Assembly (NCBI RefSeq): GCF_001194135.2
Contig: NC_068994.1
Span: 54,908,929 to 54,972,928 of the forward strand
Reading direction: 5' to 3'
Length of the DNA: 64,000 nt
Source: Octopus bimaculoides
Taxonomy: Eukaryota
Made by a program: the position numbers and the translations under genes. Under the pieces are notes generated by a model that was not told the origin of the DNA, did not search any database, and was given only the letters and a program-made list of their open reading frames with translations. This document shows, piece after piece, positions 20,878-62,169 of the stretch (the first letter of the stretch is position 1; the number at the start of each line of letters is the position of its first letter).

Positions 20878-21162
20878 TCATAACATGCCACTGTTCGTTA
20901 GGACCATTGTATCAGCTCGAATCATACTGAGTTCATCTGACTGTAACTGGTTTAACGAGGTGCGGCTTTTGCTGAATGGTTTTATGTCTGCCACCATCGA
21001 CAGATGTTTTGCCATGGCACCTCGCAATGGAGGCGTACCACATTCGACAGACGGATTCATGAGATGGTCAACTACCTTGGCCAATCGCTCACCGACTAGT
21101 GAATAGTTGCTGCAGTCTTCGGTCACGTAATACCAGTCAGATTCTAAGACACCACTAGGACA
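20878..21162 (-). CDS. Exon 20, terminal ([38 protein letters not shown]...NSGML*)
   Basis: cctttctttgcag|TGT...TGA; 285 nt, phase 0; plausible closing helix of the SLOG fold. Confidence 0.82.
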   Translation of the reverse strand, partial: CPSGVLESDWYYVTEDCSNYSLVGERLAKVVDHLMNPSVECGTPPLRGAMAKHLSMVADIKPFSKSRTSLNQLQSDELSMIRADTMVLTNSGML

Positions 21163-60536: not shown

Positions 60537-62169
60537 TACACGAGCGCGTATATGTACGTATGTATATATGTATGCTTGTATGTTATGAGTTGTGGAAGAA
60601 AGAAAGACAAACGGAGGAATTCGGTTTGACAGTTCTACGCGAAGTAGTCAGAAATATTGATTTAATTCTTTACATATGCAAAACGAGGGAGATTTTATAA
60701 AAATGGAAGTGATATGGGTGGAGAGAACAAACACAATAAATATGATTTTGTGGCATTCATGCATTTCTCGTCGATCTTAGTCACAGAAATGAAGTGAAAT
60801 GTGACGAGTTTGATACGGCAAGTTTGGATGTTAATTAACATGAGAGAAAAAACTTTTATTTCCAACTTGGGTTTTTTTTCTTCTTCTTGTATTAAATAAG
60901 AAAACACGAACGACCAAACGTGTGTATAGGGGTACATGACAAAATTAATGGGGTGGGGCACCACATACATACACATATATATATAATTACGTGTATATTG
61001 ACTGTAATAAGGTCGAAATCGAGCTGGGTGTGGAACTATAAATATACCAATAATACATGCAATGTTTGTGTTTTTGTATGAGTCTGTATAATAGATCTGT
61101 GTGCGTGTGCATTGATAGATAGATAATATAATTAGGGCAAACACACATATACACTACATGTGTATGTGTTTATGTATACTTTTATTTATGTTTCTGTGAG
61201 TGCGTGTGTATATATAGATATATAATACACGCACACACTTTCACCTAAACTATATAAAGCACATATATAAACGCAAATTATACAACCACATCTAAAATGG
61301 AAACACATACGTATACACAAACGCATACTAGAAATACCAAACGCATATATACACCAATGTACACACACACATATACATGTATACAGGTATATGTATGTTT
61401 GCGTGTGTAAAAGTATGACTATGTGAATTATCAAATTGAAGTTTTTTGTACCATGGTTTTTAATATTAGTTCAGTCAAACAACACAGATGAATGTTATGG
61501 TAGAATTAATCAGAACGGAGAGTGGGGAACTAAGTGTGTGAAAATATGTGTGTATATATGTGTGTATATATATATATAAACACACATACACACAATGTAC
61601 TTACTGGCTAAATGAGCAATGTAACATGCTAGTAATAAAATGTGTTGTCGTGTACCTTCCCACATTACGAACCGGCCTTGTTAGCTTTATTAGTGTATAT
61701 AGACAAACCCACACACACACGTGTGTGTGTGTGTGTGTATGTTTATATATGAGTCTGTGTAGAGTTTACTTGTTTGTTATTTATTTATTTTTTTCATTTC
61801 AAACTGTATAAAGAAACAATTCTGAAAGGATAACGGCAAGAGACCCCTATACAGATTCTTCTGTTTATGCACATTTCTACAGCACCCACAAATAAATATA
61901 TAAATATATATATATATTGTAAATAGAATTATAAGCTTTCACCATATATATTGATTATAGAAAATACGGTGAAAGCTTTTCTATTTACAAAATTTTCAAT
62001 CGTCAACGTTCCATTCGGTTATAAAAGCGTAGAATATGTACACAAAAACATGACTATATATATATGTGTGTGTGTGTGCATGTATAAGTTGGAATACATG
62101 AAAGAAGAATGGTCATGAATTAATATTGAATGTACAATTTCGCGCACATTTGGAAATACCTGCAGACAT
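20878..62169 (-). CDS. 20-exon gene, 853-aa protein: Cys/His-rich N-terminus + 2 ubiquitin-like repeats + TIR + TIR + SLOG-like domain
   Basis: Hand-spliced exons (minus): 62160-62169, 58990-59040, 47143-47335, 44652-44740, 44109-44215, 43522-43715, 42075-42243, 41086-41211, 40733-40859, 39459-39610, 38044-38163, 37127-37217, 35806-35918, 35089-35190, 33937-34056, 32860-32951, 32213-32381, 30652-30793, 29513-29622, 20878-21162. Lengths sum to 2562 nt with no internal stop; every intron is GT..AG with matching phase. Domain calls come from motif recognition, not a database search. Exons 1-2 are less certain than exons 3-20. Confidence 0.88.
22481..22733. mobile_element. Inverted pair of Penelope-like pseudo-LTR fragments with hammerhead-like cores
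   Basis: Plus copy: CTGATGA(22651)-A-GGCTG..CAGCC-GAAA-CG...CG-TC(22723). An inverted homologous copy occupies 22481-22562. Confidence 0.55.
23651..23736 (+). repeat. (GT)n microsatellite
   Basis: Read directly. Confidence 0.95.
27025..27520 (+). repeat. Compound minisatellite built from ggtgccacgtaaaaatgcac-like units
   Basis: More than 15 recurrences of (gt)aaaaatgcac/aaagtgcac; abuts a family B copy. Confidence 0.85.
27839..28014. mobile_element. MITE-like hairpin
   Basis: attattaagattgaaaacagagagatctaatggatacaaatt...aacatcttcac is inverted against gtgaagatgtt...aatttgtatccattaaatctctccgttttcagacttaataat. Confidence 0.75.
29513..29622 (-). CDS. Exon 19, SLOG ([37 protein letters not shown])
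   Basis: ccctctgacag|GT AGC...GAG|gtgaga; 110 nt. Confidence 0.88.
30652..30793 (-). CDS. Exon 18, SLOG ([47 protein letters not shown])
   Basis: tgtgtttttag|AAC...GAA G|gtttgt; 142 nt. Confidence 0.88.
32213..32381 (-). CDS. Exon 17, SLOG ([30 protein letters not shown]...[11 protein letters not shown])
   Basis: tattctattccag|G GCA...GAG|gtagga; 169 nt. Confidence 0.9.
32860..32951 (-). CDS. Exon 16, SLOG start ([30 protein letters not shown])
   Basis: ttcttctatttag|ATT...TGT AT|gtaagt; 92 nt; supplies the phase change needed between exons 15 and 17. Confidence 0.87.
33937..34056 (-). CDS. Exon 15 [40 protein letters not shown]
   Basis: ctttgtttcag|GAT...ATT|gtaagt; 120 nt. Confidence 0.87.
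35089..35190 (-). CDS. Exon 14 [34 protein letters not shown]
   Basis: ttttttttacag|GCA...AGG|gtaagt; 102 nt. Confidence 0.9.
35806..35918 (-). CDS. Exon 13, TIR2 core ([37 protein letters not shown])
   Basis: ttctttgtag|GT TCC...CAA|gtaagc; 113 nt; IFVLS..Y..S..C motif. Confidence 0.92.
36526..36803. mobile_element. MITE-like long hairpin in intron 12
   Basis: ~125-bp inverted arms around a ~20-nt loop; a diverged single-arm copy lies at ~24570-24690. Confidence 0.8.
37127..37217 (-). CDS. Exon 12, TIR2 ([30 protein letters not shown])
   Basis: ttttttatag|GGA...AAC G|gtaagt; 91 nt; L...L...G..VW motif. Confidence 0.88.
38044..38163 (-). CDS. Exon 11 [40 protein letters not shown]
   Basis: ttttacag|GAG...TTT|gtaagt; 120 nt. 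Confidence 0.85.
39212..39427 (+). repeat. 20-bp minisatellite (gacacctgtgcctattaagt), ~11 units
   Basis: Read directly; it starts at the terminal cacacctgtgcct of a family A SINE. Confidence 0.9.
39459..39610 (-). CDS. Exon 10 (C)[50 protein letters not shown]
   Basis: tttcttttag|GT TCA...AGG|gtaaac; 152 nt. Confidence 0.85.
40321..40560 (+). repeat. 20-bp minisatellite (gactaacagacagaccgatg), 12 units
   Basis: Read directly; near-perfect copies. Confidence 0.95.
40733..40859 (-). CDS. Exon 9, TIR1 C-part ([42 protein letters not shown])
   Basis: ttttatttcag|GTG...GCA T|gtaagt; 127 nt. Confidence 0.92.
41086..41211 (-). CDS. Exon 8, TIR1 core ([42 protein letters not shown])
   Basis: ccag|GAT...GAG|gtaaat; 126 nt; BB-loop-like segment and Y..T.W...E helix. 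Confidence 0.93.
42075..42243 (-). CDS. Exon 7, start of TIR1 ([31 protein letters not shown])
   Basis: ctgtttttag|T TCC...TTG|gtaaga; 169 nt; TIR box-1-like ISY motif. Confidence 0.92.
42770..42860 (+). mobile_element. Possible Penelope-like GIY-YIG endonuclease C-terminal remnant
   Basis: Translates [24 protein letters not shown], resembling the LN.R.E....C.H..KFLL end of Penelope ORFs (recognised from memory). Confidence 0.45.
43522..43715 (-). CDS. Exon 6 [25 protein letters not shown]...LPSRKRK
   Basis: tttgttttgacag|AGA...AAA CA|gtaagt; 194 nt; second GWPV..QE motif. Confidence 0.88.
44109..44215 (-). CDS. Exon 5 (G)[35 protein letters not shown]
   Basis: tctcttttag|GG ATG...CAG|gtacgt; 107 nt. 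Confidence 0.88.
44652..44740 (-). CDS. Exon 4 (G)[29 protein letters not shown]
   Basis: tttacag|A TGG...TTT G|gtaagt; 89 nt. Confidence 0.85.
44830..45400 (+). mobile_element. Probable RTE-clade LINE 5' region, non-coding remnant
   Basis: GC-richer block with gtgctccattgacccggagagctatgctgg...ccaggccagacaggttgaagggtag; a diverged relative lies at ~22030-22240. Confidence 0.4.
47143..47335 (-). CDS. Exon 3, ubiquitin-like repeat 1 ([15 protein letters not shown]...[25 protein letters not shown])
   Basis: tttctttctgcag|GG ... AAA GG|gtaagt; 193 nt open frame. Confidence 0.85.
50440..50745 (+). repeat. Degenerate (GATA/GACA/GGCA)n compound satellite
   Basis: Read directly; similar arrays at 26160-26375 and 58535-58705. 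Confidence 0.85.
55138..55877 (+). mobile_element. Composite non-autonomous element with TTAA-CCCT..AGGG-TTAA ends (piggyBac-like) and a nested family B insertion
   Basis: Begins ttaacccttttgttacc and ends tatcaaaagggttaa; the internal head unit repeats. Similar fragments at ~400-560, 36230-36395, 36830-37035, 45400-45550 and 53340-53490. Confidence 0.45.
55330..55668 (+). mobile_element. Retroposon family B with (GAT)n tail
   Basis: ggcacgtaaaaagcacccactacactctc..gagtggttggcgttaggaagggcatccagctgtag...ggacgttaaacgatgatgat. Other copies at ~21460-21900, 27500-27670, 31240-31565, 33175-33370, 34700-34840, 37258-37480, 38370-38570, 38781-38982, 41390-41603, 45900-46120, 50745-50955 and 53113-53330. 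Confidence 0.8.
58990..59040 (-). CDS. Exon 2 (G)[16 protein letters not shown]
   Basis: aaatacag|GC CTC...TGT G|gtaaat; 51 nt, phase 1 to phase 1. The acceptor has a weak pyrimidine tract. Confidence 0.65.
62160..62169 (-). CDS. Exon 1 coding part (MSA + G)
   Basis: cgaaATG TCT GCA G|gtattt, purine at -3. Its phase-1 donor joins exon 2 in the one frame that runs open through exon 3. It sits in the CpG-retaining 5' region. Confidence 0.6.

What the first reader, a model, noticed from the sequence alone, without database searches (positions are those of the whole stretch)
20878..62169. Animal TIR-TIR-SLOG protein: a candidate Thoeris-like signal-maker and sensor fused in one polypeptide
Seen: a cleanly spliceable 853-aa ORF with two TIR folds (exons 7-10 and 11-15) followed by a Rossmann-like C-terminal domain. 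That domain reads [65 protein letters not shown], which follows the SLOG (Smf/DprA/LOG) strand-helix pattern. Established: in bacterial type I Thoeris, a ThsB TIR turns NAD+ into a glycocyclic ADPR isomer that binds the SLOG domain of ThsA; animal SARM1 and plant NLR TIRs are also NADases. Inference: this gene may encode a cephalopod innate-immune or cell-death switch that makes and senses an ADPR-type messenger. I see no LRR, ARM, SAM or transmembrane segment, so it is not a TLR, MyD88 or SARM1 ortholog.
Basis: partly seen in the sequence, partly recalled or inferred. Interest (0 to 1): 0.9.

Follow-up and report, generated by a model that had tools for sequence, protein, structure and literature searches.

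The report
Octopus UBL-UBL-TIR-TIR-SLOG gene
This is a real 19-exon octopus gene from an old animal family that joins two ubiquitin-like domains, a SARM1-like NAD-cleaving TIR, a second inactive-looking TIR and a SLOG nucleotide-binding fold; a starfish orthologue's TIR is already reported to make cyclic ADP-ribose, but the octopus SLOG pocket has lost the motifs that bind such ligands.

Summary
On the minus strand, 62169 to 20878, lies O. bimaculoides LOC106872313. It has 19 coding exons, all introns are GT-AG, and the 2,523-nt CDS translates exactly to the 840-aa RefSeq model. All four assembly gaps are intronic and orthologues are collinear across them. The protein reads UBL-UBL-TIR1-TIR2-SLOG. 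TIR1 is closest to the SARM1 TIR and keeps the catalytic Trp-x3-Glu (W296/E300). TIR2 is a divergent TIR with Gln at that position. The C-terminal domain models at pLDDT 93, and its 50 best PDB fold matches are all SLOG proteins, including ThsA SLOG bound to 3'cADPR.

A 2026 preprint lists TIR1 of a starfish orthologue (67% identical) as producing canonical cADPR, with no 2'/3' gcADPR entered, and it draws SLOG in such architectures. So the 'signal maker' half is already known. The 'sensor' half is untested anywhere. In octopus it is doubtful, because the three glycine-rich SLOG motifs, including the equivalents of ThsA G399/E403, are degenerate in cephalopods, and also in oysters and scallops. 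There is no SIR2 or other classical effector domain. Verdict: an interesting new member of a known kind, but a poor model for SLOG sensing.

The parts
20878..62169 (-). Whole coding span of LOC106872313 (isoform X1): 19 coding exons, 840 aa, stop TGA at 20880-20878
   Evidence: the CDS assembled from the window equals P0001; all 18 introns are GT-AG
62148..62169 (-). Coding exon 1 (aa 1-8, MSAGISKW)
58990..59056 (-). Alternative first coding exon ([23 protein letters not shown], donor GTAAAT, same phase); would give an 855-aa isoform
   Evidence: matches the Argonauta hians N-terminus (P0002)
43522..47335 (-). Exons 2-5: tandem ubiquitin-like (beta-grasp) domains UBL1 (about aa 12-102) and UBL2 (about aa 103-180), plus a linker
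   Evidence: HHalign of the two halves: 98.8% probability, E 4.5e-17. AF2 model pLDDT 89.7. Foldseek top hits are ISG15, USP7 UBLs and linear di-ubiquitin
40733..42243 (-). Exons 6-8: TIR1 (aa about 226-340), SARM1-like, with W296 and catalytic-position E300; the E300 codon is the last codon of exon 7
   Evidence: Pfam TIR_2 70 bits. Best PDB relative is the SARM1 TIR at 2.6e-6, with W296/E300 aligned to W638/E642. W-x3-E kept in 32 of 33 family members
35089..38163 (-). Exons 10-13: TIR2 (aa about 418-540), a divergent TIR with Gln (Q501) at the catalytic-Glu position
   Evidence: Pfam TIR_2 25-26 bits in octopus, below the cutoff of 28; top hit in 10 of 10 members and above cutoff in 4 of 10; motif table
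29513..32951 (-). Exons 15-18: core of the SLOG domain (aa about 586-746) with degenerate motifs [21 protein letters not shown] and NCYRNKE
   Evidence: AF2 pLDDT 93.4. Foldseek top 50 are all SLOG superfamily. Motif comparison
20881..21162 (-). Exon 19: last helices of the SLOG domain (to about aa 775) and a poorly conserved C-terminal tail (aa 776-840)
54309..54705 (.). Assembly gap inside intron 1
40073..40082 (.). Assembly gap inside intron 8
26255..28983 (.). Stretch of intron 18 that contains two assembly gaps (26255-26264 and 28303-28983)

Best explanation
The locus encodes a cytosolic multidomain TIR enzyme of an ancient metazoan family with the architecture UBL-UBL-TIR1-TIR2-SLOG.

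Shown here:
- The gene model.
- The five domains.
- The SARM1-type catalytic Trp/Glu in TIR1.
- Loss of that Glu in TIR2.
- The SLOG fold.
- Decay of the SLOG ligand motifs in cephalopods.

Shown by others, in an orthologue: the isolated starfish TIR1 makes canonical cADPR in E. coli.

Inferred mechanism:
- TIR1 is the only catalytic centre. It converts NAD+ to cADPR and/or ADPR when the protein is driven into a TIR-TIR assembly.
- TIR2 is a pseudo-enzyme partner. It may supply the second TIR surface that TIR NADase active sites need, or it may keep TIR1 off until activation.
- In canonical family members (sponge, placozoan, echinoderm, most molluscs) the SLOG domain is a nucleotide or ADPR-type ligand-binding regulatory module. 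Its role would resemble that of the ARM domain in SARM1 or the SLOG domain in ThsA.
- In octopus the SLOG pocket has been remodelled. There the domain more likely acts as a structural, dimerising or regulatory scaffold, or binds a different ligand.
- The two integral UBL domains probably recruit or are recognised by partner proteins. They lack a C-terminal Gly-Gly, so they are not conjugatable modifiers.
For: - Gene model exact.
- Family spans Porifera, Placozoa, Echinodermata, Mollusca, Priapulida, Nemertea, Chelicerata and Tardigrada; the preprint's Table S2 adds a flatworm protein with the same domain layout.
- TIR1 is extremely conserved. It is SARM1-like with E300 aligned to E642, and it matches bacterial ThsB and type III Thoeris TIR models.
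- The starfish TIR1 that was assayed is 67% identical and is listed as active, cADPR yes, catalytic residue Glu327, which is octopus E300. The preprint states that activity depended on the catalytic Glu in all cases.
- TIR2 is a TIR by Pfam in 10 of 10 members and has Gln at the catalytic position. The preprint lists His at that position in the second TIR of the flatworm protein.
- SLOG fold: pLDDT 93.4; the 50 best PDB matches are all SLOG proteins, including ThsA-3'cADPR and ADPR-bound TRPM2.
- 15 of 20 family SLOG domains match LDcluster4, 9 of 20 match STALD, and 8 of 20 match PADLOC ThsA models.
- Within cephalopods the SLOG domain is more conserved than the linkers (77% against 56-64%; 45% against 22-38%), so it is still under constraint.
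- Tandem UBL fold.
Against: - No expression, biochemical or genetic data exist for the octopus gene, and RNA-seq was not available here.
- The cADPR result comes from an isolated domain over-expressed in E. coli, with lysate collected at 4 h, in a preprint. Its authors call their conclusions speculative.
- The roles proposed for TIR2, the SLOG domain and the UBLs are inference only.
- Mapping ThsA G399/E403 onto the family motif is at motif level, not from a residue-level structural superposition.
- A remodelled pocket could still bind a ligand.
- No full-length model was made, so interdomain contacts are unknown.
Confidence: 0.55

Rival explanations
1. One reading: a self-contained Thoeris-like switch in which TIR1 makes a glycocyclic ADPR isomer and the protein's own SLOG domain senses it, triggering immunity or cell death in the octopus.
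For: TIR1 has the catalytic Glu and Trp and matches ThsB and ThcB4 models. The SLOG fold matches ThsA SLOG bound to 3'cADPR. Canonical relatives match STALD and ThsA HMMs. Bacterial type III Thoeris also pairs several TIR proteins with a SLOG-containing effector.
Against: The orthologue's row lists canonical cADPR and has no entry for 2'cADPR or 3'cADPR. The octopus SLOG lacks the equivalents of ThsA G399 and E403 and the other glycine-rich motifs, and no SLOG HMM recognises it. No SIR2 or other effector domain is fused. Putting maker and sensor in one chain is not the Thoeris layout.
Confidence: 0.12
2. A SARM1-like executioner: the protein's main job is NAD+ depletion (metabolic cell death or dormancy) rather than signalling, with the SLOG and UBL domains acting as auto-inhibitory or metabolite-sensing modules.
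For: TIR1's closest solved relative is the SARM1 TIR. SARM1 also makes cADPR as a by-product. A multidomain protein with regulatory domains around a catalytic TIR parallels SARM1 logic.
Against: The preprint's NAD+-depletion column is empty for the starfish orthologue, and the authors say most cADPR-producing TIRs did not deplete NAD+. There are no SAM oligomerisation domains.
Confidence: 0.15
3. A non-enzymatic adaptor: the TIRs and UBLs serve only as protein-protein interaction modules in TLR/IL-1R-like signalling (the classical 'ecTIR-DC adaptor' view), and the catalytic residues are vestigial.
For: Invertebrate-wide conserved TIR proteins have been proposed as adaptors or regulators (PMC6321704). 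TIR2 is non-catalytic. UBL domains are interaction modules.
Against: W-x3-E is kept in 32 of 33 members spanning sponges to echinoderms, and the orthologue is listed as catalytically active. Fusion to a nucleotide-binding SLOG fold argues for nucleotide chemistry.
Confidence: 0.1
4. In canonical family members the SLOG domain is itself an enzyme (a LOG-like N-glycosidase or phosphoribohydrolase) that processes the TIR product or another nucleotide. Cephalopods would have lost this activity.
For: The best fold matches are LOG enzymes and PpnN nucleosidase. The family consensus SVRERE...EGGPGAAHEAEE resembles, from my memory, the LOG Arg / PGGxGTxxE catalytic motifs. The Aravind group predicts ADPR-processing SLOG domains (PMC9503650).
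Against: No assay exists. The same motif residues serve ligand binding, not catalysis, in ThsA. The octopus copy lacks them.
Confidence: 0.08

Closest known systems
The animal TIR+SLOG proteins in Hurieva et al. 2026 (bioRxiv 10.64898/2026.04.20.719644): Patiria miniata A0A914B4U3 (TIR assayed), and Hypsibius A0A9X6NDW2, Ramazzottius A0A1D1V4B3 and Macrostomum A0A267GNU3 (tabulated with SLOG)
   Same: Same family. Octopus TIR1 is 67% identical to the Patiria TIR1 that was assayed, and the catalytic Glu is at the same position. Hypsibius A0A9X6NDW2 was recovered by my SLOG profile. The layout is the same: a Glu-bearing TIR, a second non-Glu TIR and a SLOG domain.
   Different: The octopus SLOG motifs are degenerate, whereas most members are canonical. 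The preprint assayed only isolated TIR1 and does not discuss the animal SLOG domain, TIR2 or the UBL domains.
Type I Thoeris (ThsB TIR plus ThsA SIR2-SLOG)
   Same: A TIR that cyclises NAD+-derived ADPR, plus a SLOG fold. Canonical relatives hit STALD and ThsA HMMs, and the fold matches 7uxs.
   Different: One polypeptide rather than two genes. No SIR2 effector. The orthologue's product is canonical cADPR, not 3'cADPR. The octopus copy lacks the E403 and G399 equivalents.
Type III Thoeris (several TIR proteins plus a SLOG-containing effector; van den Berg et al. 2024, as described in 10.64898/2025.12.03.692087)
   Same: Multiple TIRs combined with a SLOG domain. TIR1's best NCBIfam match is ThcB4 (1.1e-15).
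   Different: The score of 57 bits is far below the family cutoff of 220. The family's SLOG domains hit TIGR00725, not a type III effector model. Signalling in type III is itself uncharacterised.
SARM1
   Same: Closest solved TIR; identical placement of the Trp and catalytic Glu; a multidomain, regulated NADase that can make cADPR.
   Different: No ARM or SAM domains. Has UBL-UBL, a second TIR and a SLOG domain instead. Not an orthologue.
TRPM2 MHR1/2 (LSDAT SLOG) domain
   Same: An animal SLOG fold used as an ADPR-binding regulatory module; ADPR-bound zebrafish TRPM2 (6pkx) is among the fold matches.
   Different: A different SLOG family, fused to an ion channel rather than to TIRs.
ISG15 and the USP7 HUBL tandem ubiquitin-like domains
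   Same: Two consecutive beta-grasp ubiquitin-like folds.
   Different: Internal N-terminal domains with no C-terminal LRLRGG; sequence identity 8-16%.

Membership tests
Catalytic (NADase/cyclase) TIR domains | TIR fold recognised by TIR HMMs | tested here: met
   TIR1: Pfam TIR_2 70.2 bits (cutoff 28) and TIR 23.4 bits (cutoff 21.3)
Catalytic (NADase/cyclase) TIR domains | Catalytic Glu in the alpha-C region, aligned with SARM1 E642 | tested here: met
   E300 aligns to E642 and W296 to W638 in the phmmer alignment. It corresponds to Glu327 of the Patiria TIR that was assayed
Catalytic (NADase/cyclase) TIR domains | Measured NAD+ cleavage or cADPR production | not testable with these tools
   Known only for an orthologue's isolated TIR1 (preprint Table S4 row 129)
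Catalytic (NADase/cyclase) TIR domains (applied to TIR2) | Catalytic Glu present | tested here: not met
   Gln at the aligned position in octopus (Q501) and in all but two of the 34 members, which have Glu (Candidula) or Lys (one metagenome sequence). TIR2 is a TIR fold by Pfam but not a catalytic one by this criterion
SLOG superfamily | Rossmannoid SLOG fold | tested here: met
   AF2 pLDDT 93.4; the Foldseek top 50 are all SLOG proteins: LOG, DprA, PpnN, TM1055, molybdenum-cofactor carrier protein, TRPM, ShosA and ThsA
SLOG cluster 4 (Pfam PF18306 LDcluster4) | Match to the family HMM above threshold | tested here: not met
   The octopus domain gets no Pfam hit even at E <= 10. 15 of 20 orthologous domains match, best 9.4e-12. 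Membership therefore follows from orthology, not from a direct match
SLOG cluster 4 (Pfam PF18306 LDcluster4) | Glycine-rich nucleotide-binding motifs (GGxxG after strand 2; GGxGxxxE after strand 4) | tested here: not met
   Octopus has [21 protein letters not shown] and NCYRNKE against the consensus TGGFYGVGE, EGGPGAAHEAEE and CTGGAAGG
Type I Thoeris | SLOG sensor fused to a SIR2 (or other) effector domain | tested here: not met
   No SIR2 or other effector domain found by Pfam, NCBIfam or PADLOC
Type I Thoeris | 3'cADPR-contacting residues of ThsA (G399 backbone, E403) | tested here: not met
   By motif-level mapping G becomes D713 and E becomes I717. This is not a residue-level structural superposition
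Type I Thoeris | The TIR produces 3'cADPR | not testable with these tools
   The orthologue's row lists cADPR only; the 2'cADPR and 3'cADPR columns are empty
SARM1 orthologues | ARM plus tandem SAM domains N-terminal to the TIR | tested here: not met
   Pfam finds none. The N-terminal region is a tandem UBL
ISG15-type ubiquitin-like modifiers | Tandem UBL fold | tested here: met
   Foldseek top hit is ISG15 7s6p at 2e-5. Internal repeat E 4.5e-17
ISG15-type ubiquitin-like modifiers | Free C-terminal LRLRGG for conjugation | tested here: not met
   UBL2 runs on into the linker and TIR1 and has no Gly-Gly terminus (sequence)

The most novel reading that the evidence does not exclude
In the canonical members of this family (sponge, placozoan, echinoderm, limpet and others) the SLOG domain binds the cADPR-type product of TIR1, in cis or between protomers. 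That would make a self-amplifying TIR-to-SLOG signalling module and the first animal counterpart of Thoeris. Cephalopods, oysters and scallops would then have lost or retuned the ligand pocket independently while keeping TIR1 catalysis, which implies a lineage-specific rewiring of the pathway.
Probability: 0.2. Interest if true: 0.8.

Novelty: new member of a known kind. Interest (0 to 1): 0.5.

Why it matters
Whether animals use TIR-made nucleotides as second messengers, as bacteria and plants do, is an open question, and no animal receptor for such a signal is known. This family physically joins a demonstrably catalytic TIR to a fold that serves as the receptor in Thoeris, and it is conserved from sponges to echinoderms. 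That makes it an obvious place to look for an animal TIR-signal receptor.

The analysis adds three things.
- The full architecture: tandem UBLs, a catalytic TIR, a pseudo-TIR and a SLOG domain.
- The finding that the SLOG pocket is canonical in most phyla but has decayed in three mollusc lineages, including the octopus.
- Practical guidance: starfish, limpet or placozoan orthologues should be used for ligand-binding tests rather than the octopus gene.

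Tried and rejected
- Exact-protein look-up found only the genome record, not an octopus transcript contig.
- Sequence-profile searches of the SLOG and N-terminal alignments against PDB sequences found nothing meaningful. Fold comparison was needed instead.
- HHalign of TIR2 against TIR1 gave only 46% probability over the first 40 columns, so TIR2's identity rests on the Pfam TIR_2 hits and on the preprint's structure-based call for the flatworm protein.
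- SLOG against TIR1 by HHalign: no relation (0.4%), so the C-terminal domain is not a third TIR.
- Burroughs et al. 2015 (the SLOG classification) and van den Berg et al. 2024 (type III Thoeris) are not held in the library. Anything said about them comes from citing papers or from memory and is marked as such. The ecTIR-DC classification paper (Gerdol et al. 2017, citation from memory) did not come up either, so I could not check whether the family already has an ecTIR-DC number.
- NCBIfam scan of the SLOG domains for type III Thoeris effector models: only TIGR00725 matched.
- I looked for a second gene in the flanks (1-20800 and 62200-64000) and found only low-complexity, microsatellite-derived ORFs.
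- Considered and rejected: an annotation artefact or pseudogene (the ORF is intact, orthologues are collinear and the domains are under constraint); a third TIR; a SARM1 orthologue.

Full report

The window is 64 kb of AT-rich, microsatellite-laden sequence with seven assembly gaps. TIR-like and SLOG-like peptides appear only in minus-strand reading frames.

A rough concatenation of those segments retrieved a 1194-bit match, P0001, which is Octopus bimaculoides 'uncharacterized protein LOC106872313 isoform X1', 840 aa. Mapping P0001 back to the window gave 19 blocks at 100% identity. After the split codons were resolved, the exon table has 18 introns, all GT-AG. The joined 2,523-nt CDS translates exactly to P0001, with ATG at 62169 and TGA at 20880-20878. 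One search places the window at GCA_001194135.2, CM046614.1:54928806-54972097.

**2. Gaps (tested first, as requested)**

- Gap 54309-54705 lies in intron 1.
- Gap 40073-40082 lies in intron 8.
- Gaps 28303-28983 and 26255-26264 lie in the 8.35-kb intron 18.

The exons on either side are in frame. The Argonauta orthologue (P0002) and a decapodiform orthologue (P0003) are gap-free across junctions 8/9 and 18/19, so no coding exon is hidden in those gaps. The first exon is variable. An alternative first exon at 59056-58990 ([29 protein letters not shown] donor, same phase) matches the Argonauta N-terminus and would give 855 aa.

**3. Transcript evidence**

P0003, however, is encoded as one uninterrupted 829-aa ORF with UTRs on a 3,178-nt contig assembled from run SRR29271486 (L002). 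That is a spliced mRNA of the orthologue.

- All 17 internal octopus junctions are gap-free against Argonauta.
- 15 of the 18 junctions are gap-free against the mRNA-derived protein. The three exceptions fall in variable loops.

The splice model is therefore well supported, but not directly demonstrated in octopus.

**4. Domain anatomy**

*(a) N-terminus, aa about 12-180.* The two halves are homologous to each other (HHalign 98.8%, E 4.5e-17). The AF2 model has pLDDT 89.7. Its best PDB matches are ISG15, the USP7 UBL repeats, linear di-ubiquitin and talin F0/F1. This is a tandem pair of ubiquitin-like beta-grasp domains. They are internal domains with no Gly-Gly terminus.

*(b) TIR1, aa about 226-340.*
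- Pfam TIR_2 scores 70 bits. PADLOC ThsB1 scores 3e-11 and NCBIfam type III Thoeris ThcB4 scores 1e-15, both well below any family cutoff.
- Its closest solved relative is the SARM1 TIR (2.6e-6). In that alignment W296 and E300 sit on SARM1 W638 and the catalytic E642.
- Across 34 family members TIR1 is nearly invariant, and W-x3-E is kept in 32 of the 33 that have the region.

*(c) TIR2, aa about 418-540.*
- Pfam TIR_2 is the top hit in 10 of 10 members tested and above the gathering cutoff in 4 of them. Octopus scores 25-26 bits against a cutoff of 28.
- At the position aligned with the catalytic Glu, almost all members, including octopus (Q501), have Gln.

*(d) C-terminal domain, aa about 586-775.*
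- The AF2 model has pLDDT 93.4 and pTM 0.91.
- All 50 best Foldseek PDB matches are SLOG-superfamily proteins: LOG, DprA, TM1055, PpnN, molybdenum-cofactor carrier protein, TRPM2/3/4/5/7 MHR1/2, ShosA, and BcThsA SLOG bound to 3'cADPR (7uxs, TM 0.55-0.58).
- Among 20 orthologous domains, 15 match Pfam LDcluster4 (best 9e-12), 9 match STALD (the ThsA-type SLOG family), 8 match PADLOC ThsA models and 13 match TIGR00725.
- The octopus domain itself matches none of these.

**5. The SLOG pocket**

In ThsA, 3'cADPR is held by E403 (ribose hydroxyls), by the backbone of G289 and G399, and by S290, R371 and K388 (Manik et al. preprint). G399-x3-E403 corresponds to G-A-A-H-E in the family consensus EGGPGAAHEAEE. 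This mapping is at motif level, not from a structural superposition.

| Motif | Family consensus | Octopus |
|---|---|---|
| After strand 2 | TGGFYGVGE | SSGCYGASQ |
| After strand 4 | EGGPGAAHEAEE | [12 protein letters not shown] (Gly to Asp713, Glu to Ile717) |
| Third motif | CTGGAAGG | NCYRNKE |

The same decay is seen in all 3 cephalopods, all 5 ostreid oysters and all 4 scallops examined. Sponge, placozoan, echinoderm, gastropod and chiton sequences are canonical.

Within cephalopods the SLOG domain is still better conserved than the linkers: 77% against 56-64% for octopus versus Argonauta, and 45% against 22-38% for octopus versus the decapodiform. It is the least conserved of the folded domains. 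So the domain is retained under constraint, but its canonical ligand site is not.

**6. Family and relatives**

Orthologues with the same length and layout occur in:
- Porifera (Oscarella) and Placozoa (Trichoplax);
- Echinodermata (Acanthaster, Diadema, Amphiura, Anneissia);
- many Mollusca;
- Priapulida and Nemertea (Tubulanus);
- Chelicerata (Limulus, Tachypleus, Nymphon);
- Tardigrada (Hypsibius).

No vertebrate or insect sequence appeared among the hits listed, but I did not run a dedicated absence test.

An exhaustive profile search with the SLOG domain found 662 cluster representatives at E <= 1e-3, and 75 at E <= 1e-30. The non-animal relatives I sampled were:
- stand-alone LDcluster4 proteins of about 200 aa from metagenomes;
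- Macro-SLOG-GUN4-pentapeptide-REC proteins;
- an Ion_trans-SLOG fusion;
- dinoflagellate multi-SLOG proteins.

Those contexts fit an ADPR or nucleotide-ligand module.

**7. What is already known**

Hurieva et al. (bioRxiv 10.64898/2026.04.20.719644, April 2026) screened eukaryotic TIR domains in E. coli.

- Table S4 row 129 is the TIR (residues 254-417) of Patiria miniata A0A914B4U3, an 857-aa protein. Its sequence ([20 protein letters not shown]...WTNRELKLAD...) is plainly this family's TIR1, 67% identical to octopus.
- That row reads: active yes, lysate collected at 4 h, cADPR yes, catalytic residue 327. Residue 327 is the Glu of WTNRE, equivalent to octopus E300. The 2'cADPR, 3'cADPR and NAD+-depletion columns are empty.
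- The text states that activity depended on the catalytic Glu in all cases. The Figure 3 legend lists SLOG among the domain architectures shown.
- Table S2 tabulates Macrostomum A0A267GNU3 (TIR_1 with Glu, TIR_2 with His, SLOG) and two tardigrade TIR+SLOG proteins. One of these, Hypsibius A0A9X6NDW2, was recovered independently by my SLOG profile.
- The preprint discusses SLOG as a 3'cADPR sensor only for bacterial operons. It says nothing about the animal SLOG domain, TIR2 or the N-terminal domains.
- A companion preprint describes type III Thoeris as several TIR proteins plus a SLOG-containing effector with unknown signalling. That is a close bacterial parallel.

Within the held library no other paper treats animal TIR+SLOG proteins.

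**8. Most likely mechanism**

*Shown:* the architecture, the catalytic motif in TIR1, its absence from TIR2, the SLOG fold and the degenerate pocket.

*Shown in an orthologue by others:* TIR1 makes canonical cADPR.

*Inferred:*
- TIR1 is the single catalytic centre.
- TIR2 is a pseudo-enzyme partner for the TIR-TIR assembly that TIR NADases need.
- The SLOG domain is, ancestrally, an ADPR-type ligand-binding regulator. Comparable examples are ARM in SARM1, SLOG in ThsA and MHR1/2 in TRPM2.
- In octopus the pocket is remodelled, so the domain more probably acts as a scaffold, dimeriser or regulator, or binds something else.
- The UBLs mediate partner recruitment.

I put about 0.55 on this package. 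The four rivals are scored separately in the report:
- a SARM1-like NAD+ depleter;
- a purely non-enzymatic adaptor;
- a catalytic, LOG-like SLOG domain.

**9. Verdict**

- The 'maker' half is right in kind and is already published in preprint form for an orthologue, though the product is canonical cADPR rather than gcADPR.
- The 'sensor' half is plausible for the family, untested anywhere, and weakened for this octopus gene by loss of the ligand motifs.
- There is no classical effector domain, so this is not a Thoeris system in one chain.

Novelty: a new member of a known kind. The genuinely new details are the tandem UBLs, the pseudo-TIR and the lineage-specific decay of the SLOG pocket. Interest is moderate (0.5). 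The family is a strong lead for an animal TIR-signal receptor, but canonical orthologues are the ones to test, not the octopus gene.

Noticed in passing
window 58990-59056 (minus strand): Alternative first coding exon [23 protein letters not shown] with a GTAAAT donor, in the same phase as exon 1. It matches the annotated N-terminus of the Argonauta hians orthologue and predicts an 855-aa isoform.
   Followed up: partly
window 41387-41604, 55446-55662, 50788-50956, 53153-53295, 45994-46096 (introns, both orientations): Dispersed SINE-like repeat; the copy at 55446-55662 is 94% identical to the one near 41400-41600. It produces the recurring pseudo-ORF '[19 protein letters not shown]' seen in the ORF lists. 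(TA)n and (CA)n microsatellites are abundant throughout.
   Followed up: partly
window 1-20800 and 62200-64000: No convincing second gene. ORFs of 85 aa or more are low-complexity and microsatellite-derived. Three further assembly gaps lie at 7866-8345, 13400-14110 and 18266-18485.
   Followed up: partly
P0004 (Acanthosepion pharaonis annotated protein, 1080 aa) compared with L002:160-2649 (P0003, 829 aa): The annotated cuttlefish protein carries a low-complexity insert of about 250 aa inside TIR2 that is absent from the mRNA-derived orthologue. This is probably a retained intron in the annotation.
   Followed up: partly
P0005 and P0034 (Tegillarca granosa KUTeg_005650 and KUTeg_005651, same 41.9-Mb contig): Two adjacent family members in the blood clam. 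The second lacks the core of TIR1, so this is either a tandem duplicate or a split or mis-modelled gene.
   Followed up: no
P0121 (1307 aa, metagenome) and P0118 (852 aa, metagenome): LDcluster4 SLOG domains fused to an Ion_trans channel, and to Macro-GUN4-pentapeptide-REC. The channel fusion is a TRPM-like 'SLOG-gated channel' layout outside animals.
   Followed up: no
alignment A1, SLOG motif columns: Loss of the three SLOG glycine-rich motifs in cephalopods, ostreid oysters and pectinid scallops, apparently independently, with partial loss in Priapulus and the land snail Candidula. TIR1's catalytic motif is retained in all of them.
   Followed up: partly
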